A DNA stretch of 64,000 nt from Phaeosaccion multiseriatum (GCA_965112735.1 OZ218960.1:2294001-2358000); one strand, 5' to 3'; shown: positions 1 to 12,973, counted from the stretch's first letter. Notes: generated by a model not told the origin, from the sequence alone. Translations and numbers: made by a program.

Positions 1-277
1 CTCTGAGCTCCTCCTCAATGGGGTTGCCTGCGGGGCCCAAGTCTCCGGACGGTGCCGTAAAGTACACCTTAGGAGTAGACAGACACACACAGAGGCAAGA
101 GGGAGGCGTGGGGGGTGAACGTTGGACAGATGGACCGTCAATACACACACACACTGGGATTGAGACCCAATACACACACATATGCACAAGTGCACACACA
201 CACAAACACACACACACATACATGCAAGCACCCACCCGACGCGCACACACACACACACACACACACAAAACACAACA

Positions 278-312
<35 letters not shown>

Positions 313-3300
313 CACAACACACCCCGGCCGTTCACCCTTACATGCATGGCGTGAACATCCTCGTTGGTCCTGAACCACTGCAGGCTCTGGTAGAGCACCC
401 TGTCCGTGAACTCGAGGTCCCTGAGCGTCACCGGCACGCCCAACAAGTGCTTGTACAGGGGTCTGGCCAGGTGCAGGGGCAGCGCCACTGAGTCCATCAG
501 TGCCTTTGCCAAGAAGAAGCCCACAAACTTGTAGGCAAGCTCCATGGAGCCAAACAGCTTCACCGCTCTATCGTAGGCCCGAAAGTGGCGCCTTGTGGCA
601 GGGTTGAGGAGGTAGGTGACGTTGTCGGTGGCCGCATAGGTAAAGAGGCCGAGGGAGGGGTCTGAGATGAGGCTGGCGACGCAAGAGAACCATTCCCTGG
701 CCAGGCCGCCGGCGTCGATGCCCGCCTCTCCCGTGAACTTGAAGCTGAAGGGCTGGCGGAGGCCTCCCGATGCCTGAGGAGCAGCAGCAGCAGTTGGTCA
801 TACAGCAGCGCAGTTTGTGATACATCGGTAGTTTGGTGACAGCAGCAGTCGCGTGTTGAAGAAAGAGCCGCAGTCGCATCGAGCCAAGCCCCCTTTCTCT
901 CACGCTCTCTCTCACGCTCTCTCTCACGCTCTCTCTCACGCTCTCTCTCACGCTCTCTCTCACCCACTCACTTCCTCCCGCCCTCCCGCCTTCCCGCCCT
1001 CTCTTCCTCTCTCCCTTCCTCCCTCCCTCCCTCCCTCCCTCCCTCCCCCTCACCTGCGCTGCATCTGCGGCGAAAAGCTCTCTCACACTGTCCTCTAGGA
1101 GGAAGGCCCTCCGCACCTCCACGAGTCGAGTCACCCGGGGGGGCTCAACCCAGGGCTCCACTAATGGGGACAGCCCTCCACCCTCTGTGTCTAGGATAGC
1201 CAGCGCGTCCTCTGCTGCTGTATTACCAACCGCTGCTGCTGCTGCTGCTGCTGCTCCTGCTGCTGGTGTACCACCAACTGCTGCGGGTGTTGGTGCTCCA
1301 GACCCTCCTCCTCCGCCTCCTCTTTCCCGCTCTGCCCGAGCAGAAGCCTCTCGCCGTATCCGATCGCAGTGCTTCTTGAACCAGCGCCTCTTCCTCTCAA
1401 ATGGCAGCGTCGCCACCAACGCGAGCACCTCCGTGGTGATGGTGTTACTCCTCCCTCCGGCACCCCCCCCCCTCCCGTCCTGCTCGGATTCCAACATGTC
1501 CACGAGCTGCTGTGTGTCTGCCAACTCCTCCTTGAGATCCCTGCCCCTCACCCACTCAATCTTGCCGTCGGTGGTAATCCTCCTCAGCCACGCGCTGTCG
1601 TACCGGAGAGATGGTGTCCTCCTTCTCTTCTTCCTCTGATCCCGCCTCCGCCTCCGCCGCCGCTGCTGCTGCTGCTCCTCCTCTCCCGCCCCAGCGTGTC
1701 CCCTGCTGCCTCCAGCGACCTGCCGACTACTCCGCGCTGATGCAGGCACGCGCCTACCAGGCTGTGGCTCTGACTGTGGCTGTATCACCAACTGCTGTGG
1801 CTGTGGCTGTGGCTGTGCCTCGAGGTTGGTCGGCGCGGCAGCGATGGCGACTCCTCCTCCTCCCCCTCCCCCTCCTCCTCCCGGGCTGTGCGCGGAAGAT
1901 CGGCGGCCATTAGGCCCGTTCATGCTTGTTGCACTTGTCCTCCTCCTCTCCGCTGCCCCCACAGCCATCACACCCATCGGGTCCATTTGGTCCATCGGGC
2001 CCTCGCTTGTCCCTCCGGACTCTCCCCACCCTCCTGCCCTTACACCACTACGACCTACCCTCTCAGCAGCAGGAGCACCACCTGGTAGCAGTACGCCAAC
2101 AGGAGACGACGACGGGTTGTTAAGGCTCTCTTGAAACAGAAGATGGACGCCGCGCTGCCCCTCCGCAGATGCCCACACCAGAGTCGGGGACGAAGCTTCG
2201 CCTTCTTCTCCTTCTCTTTCTACTGCTGCCACTGACGCTGATGCTGTTGTATCACCAGTAACTGTTGCTGTCGGGCTCCCGTTGTGCGTGTGTCGCCGTA
2301 ACCGTCGAAGCGGATCGCTACCACCCCCACCCCCCGCCGCTCGCGCTCTCGCGCCGTGCTCAGAATCCACCCGGCCTTCGCGCCCCCCTCCTGCCTGCCC
2401 TCCTCCTCGCCCTCTTCCTGCCCGCCCATATGCCTGCCCATACCAGTACGAGTTGTGCAAGTTATCTAGCCCAAGCACTGCGAGAGTGCTGCTGTTCAGC
2501 ACGCTGCTGCTGACCTCCTCCTCCTCCCCATCCCCCATCCTCCCTAAGTCTTGCCCCTCCCCATTGTAGCTACTGCCTCCTCCTCCTCCTCCTCCTCCTC
2601 CTCCTCCTCCTCCTCCTCCTCCTCCTCCTTCTCCTCCTCCTTCTCCTCCTCCTCCGCCCCCCCCCCTTGTCCCTCCGTTGCTAAAGCTCATAGTGTCGTC
2701 GCCCTCTAGGAAGGACACATCCGAAGACATCCTACTCATGCTCATACTCCACTCATCTTCGTCAGGCCTGGAGTCCAGAGAGGAACGCAGGTCCCGACTC
2801 CGAGTACTCCCTAAGTGTTCGCTTCCTCCGCTGTCCCTCCTCCCATACGCCGCGCCTTCTCCCCTTGCCCCTTGCCCCGCCCCCCTTCTCCGCTCCTCCT
2901 GCCCCTGCTCCTCTTTAGCCTCCTGCGGCTTCCACACAATGTCTCCATCACTGTTGAGCGCCCTGATGCTTCGGAACACTGCCTCTCCATCTGCCCCCAA
3001 CCTGCCCGCGGTCTGGGATGGAAGAAGGCCCAGCTCGGCAAACCCCTCCTCGTCGCCCTCATCCCTCTCCTCGGCACGGTCGTCATAGTGGTGCCCATGC
3101 TGCTGGTGCCTAGCGAAGAGCGCTCGGTACTCGAGAGACATGTGGCGCTGCGCAGCAGAAAGCACCGGCACCTCCTCTGCGTCTCTCGAAGACAGCGTGG
3201 TGGCCAGTCTCCGCTCGATGGCGTGAGGGGGGTAGTAAGGGCTACCCGACGACTGCTCAGACACCCCACCACCTTCCCCCCACTCCAGAGAGGTTTGGGT

Positions 3301-6300
3301 CCCTCCTTCTCCTCCACTACTCCCAGCATGATCCAACGCATTCAACGCCTGCGTCCCAAGGGTGGGCGATGCAAAAGACCCCCCCCCCCTCCCCCCCCCC
3401 CCCTCTAACATATCCCCCACCCCGAGCGTCAGTCCCGTGCCACTCCTCGAGTCCGTCAGCACAATGGCGTGCATACGCTCGAGCCTCGGCGCGTCGGGCA
3501 AATGAGGAAGGTCTCCAAGTATATCCGCCATTCCTACCCCGTCTCTGAGGTTACTGAAAGGCCCGTCCCAGCGCCGGCCACTCGCATGTTCCACCCCTAT
3601 CCCGCCGTGCCGCCCCATCCGCGGGGAGAGCCTCGCCCCCCCCCCTCCTACTCTTCCCATCCCCACCCCACTGCCGTGTGTCATTCCCTCTCTTACCCCC
3701 CCTCCCCCTTCCCCTCCCACGTCCCCCGGCCCCATAGCAAGGCCCAACGCCTCCTCCTCATCGAGGGAGATGATGGGCGAGCGGCCGATCCTCACCACAG
3801 CAGCTGCCCCTTCCTCCGTCGTCGCCTCGCCCCCGCCCCCGCCCCCGCCCCCACTCCCACTCCCATGCCCCGCTCCTGAGCCTTCTCGCTGCCCTCTCCT
3901 CTCCCCAGTCCGGCGTCTTGCTCTAGACCGCGCCTCTCCCCCCCTCCCACTCCCATGACCCCCTCCCGAACCCTCTCGTTGCCCCCTCCTCTCCCCTGGC
4001 CTACGCCTCCCTCTAGACCGCTGCCTCTCCGTGGGTCGCTCTGGAGGGGGGGCCATGATGATGTGGTGGTCGATGATGTGGTGGTCGGGTGCCGCTTGCT
4101 GATACGGCTCGTGGCACTCCGACAAGGCCCCCCGGGACTGCCCTAACGAGCGGCGTCGGTGATCAGCAATGCCACTCTCACTCTGGCTCTGATGCTGGAG
4201 TGTGAGAGCTCCTCCAGATCTGATAAGCTGTGCTCAACGGGAGGAAAGTTAAGCACAAGTGGGTCGGGAGAGGACGGATGGTGAGGGTGCGTGTGAGTGT
4301 GAGAGAGTGAGGTCAGTCGGTCAGTCGGTCGGTCGGTCCTCCCTTGCCCGTCCAGTCGTTTTCTCATGCGCCAACTCATCAAGCAAACAACCAACTACCC
4401 AACCACCACTCTTACATTCTCCAGGTGTGCGGAGCCGTGGAAGGACGAGATCCTTCCCTGCCGCTGCTGCTCCTGCACATGACTGAGCACGGCCTGTCTT
4501 CTCGAGCGCCTCGCGTTGAAGAGTTGCTCCTTCCACAGCGCCTTGCTCTTGTTCTTAACGAGCTGGCGGATGAGAAGGAAGGCCACAAGAAGGCGACACG
4601 CCCCCACCCCTCCCAACGCAGCACGTAACCCCTTCGCTGCTCCCATGCTGCGCATATGGCCGAGCCCGACCCTCGCGTTGAGCGCAGTGGACACCTCCCA
4701 CGCCCCCAGCCCCAGCGAAGCGACGATGACCCCCAAGTACAGCAGCTCCACCATGAAAGGAAAGGCCCGACCCAGAGACACGGGACGCACGAGTCGGATG
4801 AAGGACACGTAGACCAAAAGGAGGACACTCAACAGCGTGCCGCATAGCACTGAGCTACCGAGCACGACCGCGCCGCCCCTCTCCTCATCGAACAGCGCCT
4901 CGTCGCCTCCCTCGTGTCGAGCGGAGCCAAAGAGTACCCACAACACGCTCTCCACGGGCAGCAGCAGCGCCTGAGGAAGGACGGAGGACGTTGAGACGTC
5001 GACGTTGGTTTGTTGGATGGGGCAGAAGGGGGTGGGGATGAGAGTGGCAGCTTAGCTTCGTGTTAGTTAGAGAGCAAGTGCTGAGAAACGCACTCTCTGT
5101 CTCGTGGACACACACCTGCGCTGTGCAGAACATCAGTGCGGGCTTCGAAGCCGACCTGAGAGGAGGGACAGGGGAAAGGGGCAGGGGGGAGGAGAGGAGG
5201 GGGGGGGGGCATGCACGGCACACATGAAGCACCAGACAGAAGACGCAAATAACGAAGGGGGAAAGGGGGCGCTCAGCAGAGACCAGAGAAAGCAAAGCAA
5301 GCAAGCAATGGATGGACAAACCAGCTAGACTCTCTCCACGACACTCTGCCACCCCCGCACATCGCGCTCTTGTCACCCTCCCAACACACACAGACACAGA
5401 CAACACACACACAGACACAGACAACACACACACAGACAGACAGCACACACAGACAACACATACACACAGACAACACAAACACACAACACATACACACACA
5501 GACAACACAAACACAGACAACACAAACACAGACAACACACACAGACAACACATACACACCAGCCAACACATACACACAGACAAACACAAACACACAACAC
5601 ATACACACACACACAGACAACACATACAGACAACACAAACACACACAGACAACACAAACACACATACACACACACAGACCCCCCCCCCCCCACTACCCGT
5701 CATATACCTAGCGGTGTCTAGGGCTGCTTGGGACTCAAAGTAATCGCACAGGAAGCCCAAGTTGGTCCACTTGGCGCCCTCCAGAGCCGTGGAGCGCAGC
5801 AGTCGCAAAGCCTTGAGCAGGGCCACCGTCGCCAAGCTCCAGAACAGCGCTTGAGAAGCCATGAGGGCCCAAAACACATATGGGTAGCTGCCGTGTACCT
5901 CGCTGCGGCTGAGCAGGAGGGCCACAGCCAGGTTGTAGAGCACTGTGAGCAGCGAGAACAAGACGTTGAGCCATACGAGGCGGCGGTAGCGCATGACGTG
6001 GCTGACGTGACTGAGGGGCATCATCTCGCTGACAAACGTCACAACGTATAGCGCCACACACACCAAGCCCAGTACGATCTCCGCAGCCACTAGTTGACTC
6101 CCTAGGGGCCACGCCCGCTCTGTGCCGCCATCTCCTTCCCCTTCCCCTTCCCCTTCCTCCCCCTGCCCTCCCTCCGTGTCACGAGCCGCCCTCCTTGCAT
6201 AGTCGAAGAAGAACACAGCAAAGACCGCATTGAGGGGTACTTCCACCACTGCAAAGTACACGAGGAAAGGATAGAGCACCGCTGTGCCCGGGTAGGAGCC

Positions 6301-8359
6301 CGACGAATACATCCACTGCGGCACGGCAAGCGACTGCGATTGCGAGTTCGATTGCGTGTGCGAGTCTGAGCGCGAGCTGTGTACCCCGTCTCCTCCTTGC
6401 GACAAGGCTCCGGGAGGAGAGCTCGACCCCGCTTCGCCTCCTCCTCCTCCTCCTCCTCCTCCTCCTCCTCCTCCTCCTCTGCCACCCCTGCCCCCCTCCC
6501 TCCCCCCCCCCCCCCCGGTGAGCGTGCTGCCCAGATATGAGACGGTCTGCACAAAGAGCATAACGTCGTCCAAAGCGCTGCGCCGCACAGAGAGGAAGAG
6601 CAGCAAGCCCGCTAGGAATATGAAGTACGCACATCCCGTGGCGTGGAGCACAACCCAGCCGAGCATCTCCGGCGCCTTTATCTCTCTATAGTATGTGGTG
6701 CTGTCTATACTGAGGGTGGAGAAGAGGTCTCCCAGCTTGAGACACACATCCCCCACCATGAGCAGTGCGAAGACGAGCACGTGCCTGCGGATGGGCAACT
6801 GCTGAGGCTCGAGCAACTCCAGGCCCTTGAGGAACACCTGAGTGAGTGAGTGAGTGAGTGAGTGAGTGAGTGGGGGGTGGGTCAAGAGTAACCAAGAGCA
6901 AACAGGCAAGGAGGGGTTAGGTGAGCGCGTGCATGCCCTCTTCGCCCCCAAACAGGTAGGTAAGAGGCAAGCAAGCCAACAGGTAGGTAAGAGGCAAGCA
7001 AGCCAACAAGCAGGCAAGTCGGAGAGAGCCCCAAGTACAAGTACGACGCTCGCTACCTCAGGGCAAACTACTTACGGCCAGCGCAAGGGCGTTTCCTCCC
7101 CTCAACTATTCAATTCACCTGGTTGAAACTGTAACCCCTCAACTATTCACTTCACCTGGTTGAAACTGTAACCGCACAACCCCACCAACAAGCTCCATGA
7201 CACCTCCAGCAGCAGAAGGATGCGCACAACATCGTTGCTTCCCCCCGCCACCTGCCACACACTGAGGGCCGCGATCTGCGCCAAGAAGAAGGGCACCCTT
7301 GACCTCGCCCAGAGGCTGTAGGCCTGCGCAAGCACCTTCATACCGCGAAAGTCGGGCTCCAGGTCCGCGCTGCCGATGAGCTGCGTGATACGCTTGGCGA
7401 TGGCGCCCATGGTCCACGCAGCGAGGGCCCAGCTCAGGCACACGCACGCTGCAGTGAGGAAGAACACAATAGACTGTGGGTCCCGAAGGGCCCCTCCTAT
7501 CGAGGCGCCCCGCGGTCGGCCCATGTCGGTGTCCACGAAGAGTGCGATGGTCACGGCCACCACTGCCAGCGCCTGGAGCCTGTCCAACAGCTGCCCTACG
7601 TGCTTGGTGGGTACCCCACACAGCGTTCTATGCATGATGCCCAAGCCTCTCGCCCCTGCCGCCTGTGCAGTGGCCCCCGCTGTCAGATCTGCAGTCAGGC
7701 CAAGCGATCGTCGGCCGCCCACGGTGCCGTCGTTGAAGGTGGGGAACTCGTCGGGTGCAGGAGGGTGGCTGTCTATCGCGAGGGAGAAGCCCAGGCGCTG
7801 CAGGCAAGGTGGGCTGCACAGCAACAGGGAGAGCAGGTTGGTGCCGCTGAACCACGACCACAGCCACATGGGCACCGTCATGGCGAGAAGGAGATACCAT
7901 TCTCGTGCAGGTCCGAAGCGTTGGTAGGTCACCGCGAGAGCAGCAGCCTGGCAGGGCAGGGTAGGGCAGGGTGGGGTGGGATTGAAAAAAGACGGATGGG
8001 GATCTTGCCGAGGTGCCCGCGCGCGCGAGAGAGAGAGAGAGAGAAAGAGAGAGTCGGGGAGGGATGGCATACACACACACAGAGAGAGAGAGGCGGGGAG
8101 GAAGGACAGAGAGAGGGAGACGGGGAGAAGAGGAAGGGGGAAAGAAGGAAAGAGACAAAGGGAGAGAGAGAGCCAGACATGCAGAGAGAAAGAGAGAGAC
8201 AGGAGATGAAGATGGAGGAGGACAAGAGCGGGAGATGCTGGGATCGCGTATCCGTACGATGCTCCACCCTGTACCCACCTGCACCAAGCCATGGAGGGTG
8301 ATGGCCCGATAGATGCCAAACGGCGGATCATTCCACTTCCGATTCCGCTCCATGACCAT
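1..8359 (-). CDS. HECT-type E3 ubiquitin ligase with N-terminal polytopic membrane region (multi-exon, 3' end beyond window)
   Basis: HECT motifs in exons ~774-340 and ~67-1: LRQPFSFKFTGEAGIDAGGLAREWF, LGLF, YKFVGFFLAKAL, LYKHLLG.PVTLRDLE..D..LYQSLQW, VYFT...IEEEL. The preceding exon has LPFERKRRWF and VRRAFLLEDS. Upstream exons (8359-8279, 7947-7156, ~6837-5708, 5155-5116, 4970-4416, ~4227-1054) join in phase via GT-AG and encode ~15 hydrophobic helices. Start codon tentative. Confidence 0.8.
5383..5680. repeat. Intronic compound CA/CAGA microsatellite
   Basis: Degenerate ACACACAGACA array inside an intron of the HECT gene. Confidence 0.9.
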
Positions 8360-8563
8360 TCTCTCCGCCCCTCACTGCAGCTAGGCTGAACGGGCAAGCC
8401 AAGATTCAAGCCTCATGGCGAAGAAAGCCGGGGAACACCCGAGAAACAGGGTACGACTAGCGAACGAGCCGATGCCCAACTCTTCCATCTCCAACAGTTG
8501 GCGTGACTGAATGACCAACACGTGAATTCCGTGACCACCATCTCTTTTATCTTTCTCGGGGCT

Positions 8564-9140
8564 ATGGAGGCCGACGCCGCACAATGGAAGAGCCTCCTTT
8601 CCCCCTTACTCCGTGACGACTTGGTGTCGGCTGTGGCGCTTCTGGACAGGCATGGATCCACCCTTTTTTCAACAGCAAAGCCGAACTTCCGCCTGCCCTC
8701 GAGCGCGGCCAGGAATCTGCTGCTCGAAGGGGAGGGGAGGGAGCTGCTCGCCGCTCTTTCCCGTATTCACCTCTCGGCTGGTGAAGGAGTGGAGATTACT
8801 ACTACTCCCTCTCTTCAAGGTAGGCTCTTTCATCGTTTTGCTGTGCATCACTCAACGCTCAAAGCCCTCTCGGACCCCGCTTCCTTTTCCTGCCCCAGTA
8901 ATGGGTCGTACTTTCCTCATCCACCGATGCACATCCACCAGCCTCTTCGCGGTCGGTGCCGGTCGAGTGCTGGGTGTCCTGGCGAGGGAGATGCGTTTGG
9001 GAATACTCGTCGTCGTGTATCTGGCCCGACTCCCGACCGGCACCCCCCGAGTAGCTTTGCTCGCAGACCTGTTCTGCGCTCGCTGGCAGCACAAGCTACT
9101 GCCCCCCCAGGGGCTGCACCAGTCTGAGGGGGGCTCCTGA
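8564..9140 (+). CDS. Divergent profilin-like protein (2 exons: 8564-8819, 8899-9140)
   Basis: A phase-1 GT-AG intron joins two ORFs. The product AQWKSLLSPLL..LVSAVALLDRHGSTLF ... VMGRTFLIHR..STSLFAVG..LGVLAREMRLGILVVVY...VALLADLF follows the profilin pattern (W..Y..., AAI.G.DG, G.KY...R, G..I......I...Y, LADYL). Confidence 0.55.
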
Positions 9141-10217
9141 TATGGTAGCTCAGGGGAAAGGGACAACCTCCCTCAACTCGGCGGTGGTGGTGGAGCGAGG
9201 ACCTGCCTCTATTCCGAGCATCGCACATCGGAATGACTTCGAAAGAGGGCGCCGGATCCGAGAAGAATCACTAGTAAGACTATGTGCTACTGTAACCAAG
9301 GGCCAGCCATCGTGATGTTGATCCTCCAGGCAGGCACGCAGTGTCCTTGAACAGTTGGTGTCCTTCAGTCCTGGAGGAGGGACGGAGTGCGGAGTCTTGC
9401 AGCGGAGAGCAGCAGTGTCGCGGAGCCAGCAGCAGGGCATTGTGCATGCATGAGACTGCATGTCATGTAGTACCCTCTTATTGCCACACCGGTACTTGTC
9501 AGTGGGCTGTGCAGAAGGCGGGGAGGTCCGCGGCTCCAAGTGAGCATGTGTACAACAGCCTGGGGGGGATGCGCCACCGCCGCGGGACCTGAGGGCGAGG
9601 GGGTGAGGTAGTGGAGCTGCATCGAGGGGGTGAGGTAGTGGATGCACTGATTCCCTCCCCCGACACAGCTGCTCGACTGCTCCAACTCTGCCCTGAAACC
9701 CAGCTTCTGAAACGGTGGTTTTTTTTTGTTGTTGTTTGCTTCTCTTCTCTTTTTCTCGTGTCCAAGAGCCTTCTTTGTTGTCTTTTCTCTCTCGCCTTGC
9801 TTTCTCGAATCCCCAAGGACAACGTCATGGAGAAGGAAATACTTGTAAGGAAATAGAGAAGAGATTCCCCCGGGGGGCGGAGGGGAGGCCCAGGGGGGCA
9901 CTCCGTACGGAGGCACGGCCATACAAAGAGGGCAGCAGCGGTGACAGCGGGGGAGGGGGGGAGTAAGAGTGTTGTTAACTTTCGTACCCTTTGCGGGACA
10001 CACCCCTTATTAAGGTGATTCCTATTCTAAGGACTACCCCGACCCTAAGTATATCCTATTATTAAATCCCCCCTCCCTCCTTCCGTCTCCTTCTTTTACC
10101 ATTTAGTTCCTTTTGGGACGGAACGGCAAGGCGCATTTGGTCCGTCTGCTCAGATGTTTATCAAAACACTCGCCACCCTGGGGGGCACTTTATTGACTTA
10201 ACTGGGGGGCTGAAAGG

Positions 10218-10329
10218 TCGACCCCTGACACGCTATCGCCCACTTTCTCGATAACGCGCTATCGGCCGCCGACCGATAGCGGATAGCGCGCCGGCGATAG
10301 CCGATAGCGGATAGCATGTCAGGGGTCGA
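10218..10329. mobile_element. Small foldback/MITE-like element (112 bp)
   Basis: 20-bp terminal inverted repeats TCGACCCCTGACACGCTATC / GATAGCATGTCAGGGGTCGA (1 mismatch), with internal GCTATCG/CGATAGC repeats in mirrored orientation. Confidence 0.55.
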
Positions 10330-10556
10330 GGGATGGGGGGCACGAACATCTGGACATGAGGGCTTATGCGAGAGCTGTTTTTGCGTCATTCGACGGCGAT
10401 TGGCCGTGGCCCTCCAGCGGGCCCGACACGAGCGATCGATTCGCCACAGGATCCTAGCTGGCATCAACTTTGTTCCGATGGGGTCGAATGGGGAGGACTG
10501 ACGAGTCGGAGAGATACGAATACTAATAGGGGGCTTAGCTAAGTTTCGATAAGTTC

Positions 10557-10788
10557 TCGACGTTCGGCTCCAGGCGAGGTTTCTCGGGCTTTAGGCTTCT
10601 GGGCCGTAGCCCCCTCCAGGCTTCGGGCTTCTGGCCGCAGGCCAGCGCAGGCTTCTGGCCGCAGGCCAGTGGTCAGGCTTCAGGCTTCGCAGGCTGGGAG
10701 AAAAATGGGGGACTTGGCAGGCTTTTCGCTACTTTCTGCAGGCTTAATCGGGGGCTCGAGAGACCTCGCCTGGAGCCGACGACGTCGA
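10557..10788. mobile_element. MITE-like non-autonomous DNA transposon (232 bp)
   Basis: ~33-bp imperfect TIRs (TCGACGT..CGGCTCCAGGCGAGGTYTCTCGRGC). Flanked by direct repeat AAGTTC at 10551-10556 and 10789-10794. Internal GGCTTCTGGCCGCAGGCCAG-type repeats. Confidence 0.65.
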
Positions 10789-10890
10789 AAGTTCTCCGGG
10801 GCGGTGAGGCGTTACTTTTAGACAACCATAGATGGCACTTTAAAATAAATTTCCTTTTTTACTCTGTTGACTTTTGCGATCGATCTTTCG

Positions 10891-12384
10891 ATGGAGCCCT
10901 CAGAAGCTGGGGTGGTTTGTGTGGGCAGTGTAAACGTGGACCTTGTTGCATACACAGATTCCCTCCCACAAGTCGGCGAGACAGTTATCGGCAGAAGCTT
11001 TGAAAAGAACGCGGGGGGGAAGGGGGCCAATCAGATAGTGCAAGCTAGTTTGCTCGGCGCTCCTGCTTGGTTGATTGGATCGGTCGGCAATGATGCCCAT
11101 GGATATGAGTCGATTACCACCTTAAAAGACGCGGGTGTGGACGTGTCCGGTGTGAGCCGCACGGGCGATTGCTGCACCGGCATAGCCCAGATTTGCGTGG
11201 ACGATGCTGGTGCCAATACAATCGTCGTCGTGCCCGGAGCCAACCTTGCTATAGAACCGAAGGACGTGGAGGGCCAAGGAGCGCTTTTTCAGAAGGGTAG
11301 AGTGCTGCTGGTGAGTGGTGTGATGAATGACATGAACAACAACTCCCCTTCTTCGTACAATACTTCACTCAAGGAAGTCTGGCCCCCACTTGCCTTCACA
11401 GTGTCAGCTGGAGATACCTCTGGAGACCGTCCTCTGCGCTCTTACGCTGGCCAAGAAGGAGGGCATGAAGACCATTCTGAATCCAGCCCCAGCGGTCCCT
11501 CTCTCCGACGACATGTACGCCCTGTGCACCTACCTCATCCCCAACGAGGTCAGAGCCCCCCCCCCCAAAGCTATTCTCTCTTTGCTTTTCTTCTACGGCC
11601 GGAGTGAGGGGCGAGCGGCGGTGCCTTACCCTCACCCCAGATGTGCTCTCTCCTCCTTTTCCCAACTCCCTACCGGTGCTCGCTCGCCTGCCATACCAGA
11701 CGGAGCTCGCTGTCCTCTGCCCCGGCACCGACACCGAGTCCCTTCCTAGCATGACCGCTGCCGCTCAGAGTCTCGTGGACAAGGGGGTTGGCAACGTCAT
11801 CGTCACCCTCGGGGAGAGGGGCGCCCTGCTGGTGACCGAGGAGGGGAAGCAGCACCACTTCGAACGTAAGTAAGGCACGAGCACGAGTCTGGCCCAACCC
11901 AAGGCCTCCTCAAGGTCTGGTGTGTGAACGTGTCGTCAACTTTTATTTTGTGTGCGGCGTCTCACATGTTCTGTCTCATTCCTCATGTCATGCATGCAGT
12001 GGAGAGGCAGGTGCAAGCAGAAGATACCGTCGGAGCGGGAGATGCCTTTGCTGGAGCCTTGGCGGCATTCTTGGCCTCTGGGGCAGAGGTTGCCATCGCC
12101 ATTCCCAAGGTACACAGGGGGGACGGAGGGGGAGAGAGGGAAGGAGGACAGAATGGGGGGGGTAGGAAAGACTGGGAGGAAGAGGGAAGCGTCGGTCCAA
12201 GCGCCTTACTCCTCTTCCCTTCCTTTCCAGCCAACAGATCTCACGTCCCGCACCCTCCCTCCTCCTCTTGTCCGTCCAGGCCTGCGCCATCGCGAGTCTG
12301 TCGGTGCTGAAGAAGGGCGCACAGAGCTCCTACGCTCGCCTTGCTGAGCTTCCGGAACATCTCAAACTTCCCGTGCAGGCCTAA
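10891..12384 (+). CDS. RBKS: Ribokinase (PfkB family), 5 exons
   Basis: Motifs VVCVGSVNVDL, GGKGANQ, GSVGND..G, QLEIP, ILNPAP, PNE.EL, VIVTLGERGA, DTVGAGDAFAG, KGAQSSY. Stop TAA at 12382-12384. Confidence 0.95.
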
Positions 12385-12973
12385 CTCAAACTCAAACTCA
12401 AGCCCCTCGACGCCTGGACCCTTGACCCCTCGCTGCTGCTTTTGCTGCTGCTTTTGCTGCTGCGGCGGCGGCGGCCAGAGCACAGCAGCCTCTGGGGCGG
12501 TGGCTGGAGAGGGAGAGGGAGAGGGCGAGGGCGTTGCGCGGAGGGGTTGTGCCCTGGGCAGGATGGAAAGGTGACACACAACACACACAGTCAAACAGTC
12601 AAGGCAGTGGGCAGTCTCTTCCTTCTTTCTGCCCCGTCTGTCTATCGGGTGTGCCTATACGGATAAGGAAGGGAACGTATCGGCTGCAAGCTGTGGTCCG
12701 AAAGTCTCTGTTTCATTGATTTCATTTCGATGGGATGAGGATGGGGGAGAGAGGAGGGGGGAGAGAGTCCACACCCTACGCCGAGAGGAGAGGGGAGAGA
12801 ATCTACGCCCTGTGCTGACCGCCTGTACTCTTGCTCCCTGTGCTGCGTGCCTGCTTGTCCCTCCATGTTTATGCCCTCACCCTCAGACAGGCACGACTTG
12901 GCCTCACGCCCCCGTCGAGTCGAGACGCCATTTGGAGCGGGAGAATCACCAACTGCCTTCCTGACTCCCTCCC

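What the first reader, a model, noticed from the sequence alone, without database searches (positions are those of the whole stretch)
1..8359. HECT E3 ligase fused to a ~15-helix membrane domain
Seen: the hydrophobic exons splice in phase into the HECT-bearing ORF. The junctions are ...DTAR|SASKPALMFCTAQ|ALLLPVES (40-nt micro-exon at 5155-5116) and ...SAHLEN|LIRSGG. The helices appear to fall into repeated 4-TM blocks, followed by ~1000 aa of Gly-rich disordered linker and then the HECT domain. Established: the characterised polytopic membrane E3s (Hrd1, Doa10/MARCH6, Tul1) are RING-type, and NEDD4-type HECTs reach membranes via C2 domains or adaptors. Inference: this is a self-anchored membrane sensor or quality-control HECT ligase.
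Basis: partly seen in the sequence, partly recalled or inferred. Interest (0 to 1): 0.72.

Follow-up and report, generated by a model that had tools for sequence, protein, structure and literature searches.

The report
Many-pass membrane HECT ubiquitin ligase
A microalgal gene model joins a membrane domain of 12-16 helices with no known relatives, through a floppy 1,000-residue linker, to a complete HECT ubiquitin ligase; splice signals support the join but no transcript does, and membrane-anchored HECT ligases with one or four helices are already known.

Summary
On the minus strand, hydrophobic exons (7947-4416) join through canonical GT..AG introns, in phase and without stops. They lead into a 3,174-nt Gly-rich exon (4227-1054) and then a HECT domain. 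I completed the HECT domain outside the window. It has the catalytic Cys, 35 residues from the end, and the -4 Phe. The model has 11 exons and 2,284 residues.

The membrane part has 12 strong and up to 4 weak hydrophobic segments. I found no sequence repeat among them and no homologue anywhere: Pfam, NCBIfam, three word searches and one exhaustive HMMER search all came back empty.

The join between the membrane exons and the linker rests on splice signals, phase and spacing only. The four public runs holding this locus behave as DNA, and no relative exists to compare. I put one gene at about 0.68.

Plasmodium PfUT (four predicted helices) and human AREL1 (one helix) are membrane-integral HECT ligases. 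This is therefore a new variant of a known kind, unique in this genome and of moderate interest. The scan also holds an unchecked note of a "receptor-like, membrane-anchored HECT" elsewhere in this genome.

The parts
8279..8359 (-). E1, putative first exon with the start codon (27 codons). This is the least certain part of the model.
   Evidence: It is the first ATG after in-frame stops, with A at -3 and G at +4. The donor is CAG|GTGGGT, and it joins E2 in phase 0. GC3 is 0.78. There is no homology or RNA support.
7156..7947 (-). E2, 264 codons, first block of membrane helices (residues 28-291).
   Evidence: AG/GT borders, phase 0. GC3 0.78 against GC2 0.52. Hydrophobic segments at 147-165, 186-204 and 267-285, plus weaker ones. 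No Pfam or NCBIfam family, no homologue and no paralogue.
5708..6837 (-). E3, 1,130 nt, the middle membrane helices with a Gly-rich loop (residues 292-667).
   Evidence: AG/GT borders. GC3 0.73. Six hydrophobic segments. The exhaustive HMMER search with its second half found only one spurious hit. The only own-genome matches fall on the Gly-rich loop. The AlphaFold single-sequence model is all-helical but has pLDDT 47.
5116..5155 (-). E4, the 40-nt micro-exon that restores the frame between E3 and E5.
   Evidence: Strong acceptor (21 of 22 pyrimidines, then CAG) and donor CAG|GTGTGT. It is needed for phase if the strong E3 donor at 5708 is used. Alternative in-phase joins exist. It is unverified by RNA.
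4416..4970 (-). E5, 185 codons, the last four membrane helices plus a basic juxtamembrane stretch (residues 682-866).
   Evidence: AG/GT borders, with donor AAT|GTAAGAG. GC3 0.79. There are 12 Lys/Arg in the 60 residues after the last helix. No homologue or paralogue.
4228..4415 (-). Intron 5 (188 nt), the junction that decides whether this is one gene or two.
   Evidence: It starts GTAAGAG and ends with a pyrimidine tract and CAG. The donor lies 7 codons before the E5 frame's stop. The acceptor lies 3 codons after the stop that opens the E6 frame. The two are in phase. DNA contigs of four runs are colinear with the window across it.
1054..4227 (-). E6, 1,058 codons: low-complexity linker (20% Gly, 11% Arg, 10% Ala) whose last ~25 residues are the start of the HECT N-lobe.
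   Evidence: Uninterrupted frame. No Pfam family. Composition. The ...VRRAFLLEDSVREL... motif lies 23 residues before FTGE, matching by eye the ...NLVFEQSFHQL... motif 19 residues before FQGE in the genome's own HUWE1-like paralogue. BLAST and PDB searches did not detect this.
342..773 (-). E7, 144 codons, HECT N-lobe (Pfam positions 5-98).
   Evidence: PF00632, 63.9 bits, E 2.5e-17. The best solved relatives are TOM1, NEDD4, ITCH and HUWE1. It aligns to residues 170-284 of the paralogue.
1..67 (-). It is window 67..1 plus 43 nt before the window (L036:1957-2067, minus strand).
   Evidence: AG/GT borders, phase 0, 37 codons. It fills Pfam positions 99-141, which were otherwise missing. It aligns to paralogue residues 315-330, between E7 (up to 284) and E8 (from 333).

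The remaining HECT exons lie outside the window, on the minus strand of L036:
- E8: 1085-1356.
- E9: 738-905.
- E10: 356-455, with the stop codon.

Best explanation
One minus-strand gene of 11 exons encodes a protein of about 2,284 residues. Its N-terminal third (residues ~15-815) is a polytopic membrane domain of 12-16 helices with no detectable relatives. Residues 867-1900 are a Gly/Arg/Ala/Ser/Glu-rich, probably disordered tether. The C-terminus is a complete HECT domain of the NEDD4/HUWE1/HACE1 class.

Proposed mechanism (inferred): the helices fix the enzyme in a membrane of unknown identity. The strongly basic stretch after the last helix puts the tether and the HECT domain in the cytosol. 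There the HECT Cys2249 takes ubiquitin from an E2 and passes it to cytosolic loops or tails of proteins in or at the same membrane. The ~1,000-residue tether gives it a wide reach.

Six of the strong helices carry a mid-membrane Glu or Asp. This suggests that the membrane domain does more than anchor, for example that it contacts partners or senses something within the bilayer. That is speculation.

Shown: the exon chain, the coding signature, the hydrophobic segments, the complete HECT domain with its catalytic residues, and the lack of relatives.

Inferred: that E5 is spliced to E6, the topology, the targets and the compartment.
For: - All ten introns are GT..AG, all junctions are in phase, and there are no stops in 2,284 codons.
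- E2, E3 and E5 have the same GC3 >> GC2 signature as the HECT exons.
- At the critical junction, a GTAAGAG donor sits 7 codons before the stop of the E5 frame, and a pyrimidine-tract/CAG acceptor sits 3 codons after the stop that opens the E6 frame, in phase. Background rates on this strand are 0.0007 per nt for GTAAG, 0.005 per nt for GT[AG]AG and 0.0026 per nt for acceptor-like sites. Chance coincidence is therefore about 1e-4 to 6e-3, judged after the fact.
- A two-gene reading leaves only ~340 nt between the would-be stop (about 4395) and the first in-frame ATG of E6 (residue 924, about 4056). By contrast, the gene is flanked by about 4.6 kb (8360-12970) and at least 1.4 kb without coding signature.
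- There are 12 Lys/Arg in the 60 residues after the last helix, so by the positive-inside rule the tail is cytosolic, where a HECT domain must be.
- The HECT domain is complete and looks active. Pfam scores are 63.9, 78.4 and 35.5 bits on three exons. The exon order is colinear with a paralogue. The Cys lies in AHTCFN, 35 residues from the end, and there is a Phe at -4.
- The assembly is sound across the junction: DNA contigs span 2672-5377 in two runs.
- There is precedent for membrane-integral HECT ligases (PMC4022464, PMC6893019, PMC12864862).
Against: - There is no RNA evidence. The only public runs that hold the locus behave as DNA.
- There is no orthologue or paralogue of the membrane exons anywhere, so the architecture cannot be tested by conservation.
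- The first ATG of E6 has a good start context (A at -3, G at +4), so a separate HECT gene of about 1,360 residues is possible.
- The open frame upstream of that ATG is only 57 codons, which chance would give about 17% of the time at this base composition.
- The micro-exon and E1 are model choices; 284 alternative in-phase joins exist between E3 and E5.
- The helices were called with a simple hydropathy scale, not a topology predictor.
- The AlphaFold model of E3 is unusable (pLDDT 47).
Confidence: 0.68

Rival explanations
1. Two adjacent genes on the same strand. The first is an orphan polytopic membrane protein of about 873 residues that reads through the E5 donor and ends seven codons later (...HLEN + VRVVVG, stop near 4395). 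The second is a separate soluble HECT ligase of about 1,360 residues starting at the ATG near 4056 (model residue 924). The in-phase splice signals between them would be coincidence.
For: - The E5 frame meets a stop 7 codons after the proposed donor.
- The first Met of E6 has a good start context.
- No transcript or orthologue links the two parts.
- None of the ~20 other HECT loci in this genome has a cluster of helices within 10 kb upstream.
Against: - It needs a 3' end, a promoter and a 5' UTR within ~340 nt, while the flanks of the locus are coding-free for at least 1.4 kb and about 4.6 kb.
- It needs a chance coincidence of a strong donor, a good acceptor and a matching phase at the exact edges of both open frames, about 1e-4 to 6e-3.
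- The 57 codons upstream of the ATG are open while the two other frames there have stops.
Confidence: 0.24
2. The membrane part is wrongly modelled or not expressed. Some hydrophobic exons (E1, the micro-exon E4, or parts of E2/E3) would not be real coding sequence, or the locus would be a decaying lineage-specific gene. The true protein would then have fewer helices or none.
For: - The membrane exons have no homologues at all, not even in an exhaustive search.
- The language-model recognition scores are low (1,495 and 1,314).
- Low-complexity loops and microsatellite introns make many alternative joins possible.
- There is no RNA evidence.
Against: - Long open frames (420, 710 and 186 codons) carry the GC3 >> GC2 signature of this genome's real exons.
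- Every border has consensus splice sites.
- There are no frameshifts or stops in the chain.
- Plus-strand frames over the region are short and lack that signature.
Confidence: 0.08

Closest known systems
PfUT (PF3D7_0704600), the HECT ligase of Plasmodium falciparum
   Same: It is a very large HECT E3 with predicted transmembrane helices in the same polypeptide. It is found in membrane fractions at the ER/Golgi, has long low-complexity or disordered stretches, and has its HECT domain at the C-terminus (PMC4022464, PMC6893019, PMC12106546).
   Different: PfUT has four predicted helices, armadillo repeats and a UFD4-like HECT domain. This protein has 12-16 helices and no armadillo or any other Pfam domain. 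Its HECT domain is closest to NEDD4/TOM1-HUWE1/HACE1, and no UFD4/TRIP12 chain appears among its solved relatives. The two are most likely independent fusions.
AREL1 (KIAA0317), human ER-resident HECT ligase
   Same: It has an N-terminal membrane anchor, a disordered or low-complexity region between the anchor and the HECT domain, and a cytosolic HECT domain acting on proteins at a membrane interface (PMC12864862).
   Different: AREL1 has a single helix and 823 residues. Its HECT domain is a much weaker match to this one than NEDD4 or HUWE1 (E 5e-4 against 4e-19 for exon E7). It is not an orthologue.
NEDD4 / HUWE1(TOM1) / HACE1 class of HECT domains (class VI of Grau-Bove et al. 2013, PMC3673628)
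   Same: This is the best sequence match for the catalytic domain. It shares the catalytic Cys motif, the -4 Phe and the pre-HECT helix motif.
   Different: There are no C2, WW, ankyrin, DUF908/913 or UBA domains. Membrane contact would be through the protein's own helices rather than through C2 domains or adaptors. Identity to the nearest paralogue in its own genome is only 40-44%.
Polytopic RING ligases Hrd1, Doa10/MARCH6 and Tul1
   Same: They share the design idea: a ligase built into the membrane through many helices, able to meet membrane substrates (PMC10776854 for Doa10).
   Different: Those are RING ligases, which have no thioester intermediate. There is no RING here and no sequence similarity in the helices. 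The resemblance is functional only and is untested.

Membership tests
HECT E3 ubiquitin ligases (Pfam PF00632) | HECT domain match above the Pfam gathering score (23.9 bits) | tested here: met
   E7 scores 63.9 bits, E8 78.4 bits and E9 35.5 bits. The genome scan found the same exons.
HECT E3 ubiquitin ligases (Pfam PF00632) | Catalytic Cys in the C-lobe, about 35 residues from the C-terminus | tested here: met
   Cys2249 lies in ...AHTCFN..., 35 residues from the end. The motif spans the E9/E10 junction.
HECT E3 ubiquitin ligases (Pfam PF00632) | Complete N-lobe, including the segment at Pfam positions 99-141 | tested here: met
   This is met only after adding exon E7b. E7, E7b and E8 align colinearly to paralogue residues 170-284, 315-330 and 333-421. 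E7b alone is too short for Pfam.
HECT E3 ubiquitin ligases (Pfam PF00632) | Phe at position -4 from the C-terminus, known from NEDD4-type HECT domains (my own knowledge) | tested here: met
   The protein ends ...GFGLE, with F at -4.
HECT E3 ubiquitin ligases (Pfam PF00632) | Thioester formation and ubiquitin transfer | not testable with these tools
   This needs an in vitro E1/E2/ubiquitin assay with a Cys2249 mutant as control.
NEDD4 family proper | C2 domain and WW domains N-terminal to the HECT domain | tested here: not met
   No Pfam family other than HECT is found in any exon.
PfUT / UFD4-type membrane HECT | UFD4/TRIP12-type HECT domain with armadillo repeats | tested here: not met
   The solved relatives are NEDD4, TOM1/HUWE1, ITCH and HACE1; none is UFD4/TRIP12. 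There are no ARM repeats.
Membrane-integral HECT ligases (an architectural class: PfUT, AREL1) | Transmembrane helices and a HECT domain in one polypeptide | tested here: inconclusive
   Helices are present and the HECT domain is present. The single polypeptide is inferred from splice signals, phase and spacing. No RNA, orthologue or peptide supports it.
Polytopic RING ligases (Hrd1, Doa10, Tul1) | RING or RING-CH domain | tested here: not met
   There is no RING family in any exon.

The most novel reading that the evidence does not exclude
The 12-16-helix domain is not a mere anchor. It would be a lineage-specific intramembrane recognition or sensing module, and six of its helices carry a mid-bilayer Glu or Asp. 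Hard-wired through a ~1,000-residue tether to a HECT domain, it would be the first HECT counterpart of Hrd1/Doa10-type polytopic ligases, reading something inside the membrane and answering by ubiquitination.
Probability: 0.15. Interest if true: 0.7.

Novelty: new variant of a known kind. Interest (0 to 1): 0.45.

Why it matters
Ligases that are themselves many-pass membrane proteins, such as Hrd1, Doa10 and Tul1, are all RING-type. The two described membrane-integral HECT ligases have one helix (AREL1) or four predicted helices (PfUT).

A HECT ligase built on a 12-16-helix domain would widen the known ways a thioester-forming ligase is placed in a membrane. It would also give a natural test case for whether a HECT domain on a long flexible tether can police membrane proteins.

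It would add to the picture of lineage-specific HECT expansions with unusual fusions in this alga; that picture rests on unchecked scan notes. The value is limited for now. The membrane domain is an orphan with no relatives, so nothing can be transferred from or to other organisms. The fusion itself still needs a transcript.

Tried and rejected
- RNA evidence. The look-up of sequencing runs gave only four runs of one sample, none on record as RNA. Their contigs run straight through the introns, so they are DNA. Both caps are used. Zero depth at 5401-6400 in all runs is a filter or repeat artefact and proves nothing.
- Homologues of the membrane exons. All of these were negative or noise:
  - Pfam and NCBIfam.
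  - Word searches with E2, E5 and the end of E6.
  - An exhaustive HMMER search with the second half of E3. Its single hit, P0001, is an Ig-repeat protein matched through weak repeated stretches and was rejected.
  - The ESM Atlas, with scores of 0.81 and 0.75 and low recognition.
  - An own-genome search, which found only Gly-run matches.
- Orthologous loci. A metagenome scan with HECT exon E7 gave only generic HECT domains at 34-38% identity.
- Structure. AlphaFold on E3 alone gave pLDDT 47. I ran no fold search because matches to such a model are meaningless, and I did not spend the second job.
- Internal 4-TM repeats: none by blastp.
- Tool support for the pre-HECT helix at the end of E6. 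The PDB search and BLAST to the paralogue found nothing. Only a motif match by eye remains.
- Other HECT loci of this genome, checked for helices upstream. There is no cluster anywhere. One locus has a single TM-like segment.
- Literature phrases such as "transmembrane HECT" or "membrane-anchored HECT": no paper.
- The joined (spliced) protein was never sent to any search, fold or family tool. Exons were searched apart, by reference. The joined translation was made only inside scripts, to check phase, stops, hydropathy and residue numbers.
Full report
**Where it is.** The window is contig 11, 2,294,001-2,358,000, of a 67-Mb eukaryotic genome in 22 contigs. Other notes of this scan call the organism a microalga related to brown algae; I did not check that. 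The finding lies on the minus strand. It runs off the window start, so I fetched the neighbouring DNA (L011, L036).

| Exon | Position (minus strand) | Note |
|---|---|---|
| E1 | 8359-8279 | putative start |
| E2 | 7947-7156 | membrane helices |
| E3 | 6837-5708 | membrane helices |
| E4 | 5155-5116 | 40-nt micro-exon |
| E5 | 4970-4416 | membrane helices |
| E6 | 4227-1054 | linker |
| E7 | 773-342 | HECT |
| E8 | L036 1356-1085 | HECT |
| E9 | L036 905-738 | HECT |
| E10 | L036 455-356 | HECT, ends at TGA |

All borders are GT..AG, every junction is in phase and no stop appears.

Pfam positions 99-141 of the HECT domain were missing between E7 and E8. I found them in a 111-nt exon, E7b, that straddles the window start (window 67..1 plus 43 nt). 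It has AG/GT borders and is in phase 0. E7, E7b and E8 align colinearly to residues 170-284, 315-330 and 333-421 of the genome's own HUWE1-like HECT open frame. The full model has 11 exons and 2,284 residues.

**Is it coding?** The membrane exons E2, E3 and E5 have GC3 of 0.73-0.79 against GC2 of 0.44-0.52. That is the pattern of the HECT exons (GC3 0.74-0.85). The introns are 0.52-0.58 GC for I1-I5 and I7, and 0.61-0.65 for I6, I8 and I9. Plus-strand frames over the region are at most 332 codons and lack the pattern. The linker exon E6 is less periodic (GC3 0.63), as expected for low-complexity sequence.

**The catalytic end.**
- Pfam HECT scores are 63.9, 78.4 and 35.5 bits on E7, E8 and E9.
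- The catalytic Cys (residue 2249...AHTCFN...) lies 35 residues from the C-terminus, and a Phe sits at -4.
- The closest solved HECT domains are TOM1/HUWE1, NEDD4, NEDD4L, ITCH and HACE1. E6AP, AREL1, UBE3C and HECTD3 are far weaker. No UFD4/TRIP12 chain appears.
- The nearest paralogue in the genome is only 40-44% identical.
- The last 25 residues of E6 carry the ...VRRxxLLEDSxREL... helix that precedes the Pfam HECT region in NEDD4/HUWE1-type ligases. I matched this by eye to the paralogue. BLAST and the PDB search did not detect it.
- E6 therefore belongs to the HECT gene. It has no other Pfam family and is 20% Gly, 11% Arg and 10% Ala.

**The membrane part.**
- A Kyte-Doolittle scan with a 19-residue window finds 12 segments with H >= 1.5 and four weaker ones between residues 15 and 815. 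There are none of that strength in the linker.
- Six strong segments hold a mid-helix acidic residue: E275, D321, E490, E544, E688 and E756.
- The 60 residues after the last segment hold 12 Lys/Arg. By the positive-inside rule this puts the linker and the HECT domain in the cytosol.
- The claimed 4-TM repeats are not detectable by sequence.
- The domain has no relatives that I could find:
  - Pfam and NCBIfam are empty.
  - Word searches with E2 and E5 are empty.
  - The exhaustive HMMER search of 1.84 billion representatives with the second half of E3 gave one hit, an Ig-repeat protein that is clearly spurious.
  - The ESM Atlas gave nothing above noise.
  - The own genome has no paralogue.
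- AlphaFold on E3 alone gave helices at pLDDT 47, too poor to compare.

**One gene or two?** This is the crux, and it could not be settled by direct evidence. The only public runs that hold the locus are four runs of one sample, not on record as RNA. Their contigs run through the introns; for example, 2672-5377 is colinear in two runs. They therefore confirm the assembly across the junction but say nothing about splicing. No relative is close enough to compare loci.

The indirect evidence favours one gene:
- The E5 donor (AAT|GTAAGAG) lies 7 codons before the stop of its frame.
- The E6 acceptor (pyrimidine tract, then CAG) lies 3 codons after the stop that opens its frame, and the two are in phase.
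- With background rates of 0.0007-0.005 per nt for such donors and 0.0026 per nt for such acceptors, the coincidence has a chance of roughly 1e-4 to 6e-3. I judged this after the fact.
- A two-gene reading must fit a 3' end, a promoter and a 5' UTR into ~340 nt.
- By contrast, there is no coding signature for about 4.6 kb upstream of E1 and for at least 1.4 kb downstream of the stop.

Evidence against one gene:
- The first Met of E6 (residue 924) has a good start context.
- Only 57 open codons precede it.
- No other HECT locus of this genome has a cluster of helices within 10 kb upstream.

I put one gene at about 0.68, two genes at 0.24, and a wrongly modelled or unexpressed membrane part at 0.08. 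Within the membrane part, the micro-exon is the most consensus-like way from E3 to E5. It is not forced, because the E3 frame stays open through the (TG)n intron and 284 in-phase GT/AG pairs exist. E1 is the weakest exon.

**Comparison with what is known.** That premise is incomplete.
- PfUT of Plasmodium falciparum is a 3,893-residue HECT ligase with four predicted transmembrane helices. It is recovered from membrane fractions and located at the ER/Golgi (PMC4022464, PMC6893019).
- Human AREL1 is an ER-resident HECT ligase with an N-terminal transmembrane helix and a disordered or low-complexity region before its cytosolic HECT domain (PMC12864862).
- The Pfam-based survey of HECT architectures does not treat transmembrane segments (PMC3673628).
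- No paper in the library uses phrases such as "transmembrane HECT".

The present protein shares the design of PfUT and AREL1 but is not their relative. Its HECT domain belongs to another class, it has no armadillo or filamin-type domains, and it has three to four times more helices than PfUT. It works like, but is not a member of, the Hrd1/Doa10/Tul1 kind, because it has no RING.

**Verdict.**
I corrected it by one exon and by the absence of detectable repeats.
- If the fusion is real, this is a new variant of a known kind: a membrane-integral HECT ligase with an orphan 12-16-helix domain.
- Interest is moderate (0.45). The architecture is unusual and has no described counterpart with this many helices, but it is unverified by RNA, unconserved, and conceptually anticipated by PfUT and AREL1.

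Noticed in passing
window 5156-5707 (intron 3, minus strand): The intron is almost wholly an imperfect (TG)n/(TGTC)n microsatellite. It stays open in the E3 frame, reading as Cys-Val repeats, and offers more than 100 GT donors. Splice choice here cannot be read from sequence alone.
   Followed up: partly
window 5401-6400: All four DNA runs show zero laid depth here, although they hold 92-95% of the sampled words of 342-8359. This is probably contigs dropped by the tool's repeat or human-likeness filter, not a real gap.
   Followed up: no
L011 7400-8000 (intron 7, just before the window start) and window 840-1050 (intron 6): The introns are built of short tandem units. GAGTGA-type units read as 'SE*VSE*' in intron 7, and GGGA/GAGTGAGA-type units read as 'RESVRESV' in intron 6. 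Microsatellite-filled introns seem typical of this gene.
   Followed up: no
window 8360-12970: About 4.6 kb upstream of the gene has no open frame of 70 or more codons with the genome's coding signature on either strand. This is a long gene-free or small-exon stretch.
   Followed up: partly
G000 genome-wide; for example C3:5647687, C4:290437, C4:67007, C4:1952012: The Pfam HECT model gave 44 exon-level matches at about 20 loci. Some lie in single open frames of 1,683 and 2,178 codons. This is a sizeable HECT family, which fits this scan's other notes of unusual HECT fusions in this genome.
   Followed up: partly
L017 (C3:176800-186799, minus strand), oriented 8203-9648: A 482-codon coding-like frame directly upstream of the HECT exons at C3:175763-176889 holds one strong hydrophobic segment. 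This may be the 'receptor-like, membrane-anchored HECT' of note s1-360439.
   Followed up: no
model residues 275, 321, 490, 544, 688, 756 (exons E2, E3, E5): Six of the strong hydrophobic segments carry a Glu or Asp near their middle. That is unusual for a plain membrane anchor.
   Followed up: no
window 4413-4421 (E5 donor): The donor AATGTAAGAG contains TGTAA, the poly(A) signal of green algae. It lies before the read-through stop, and the organism is reportedly not a green alga, so it is probably meaningless.
   Followed up: no
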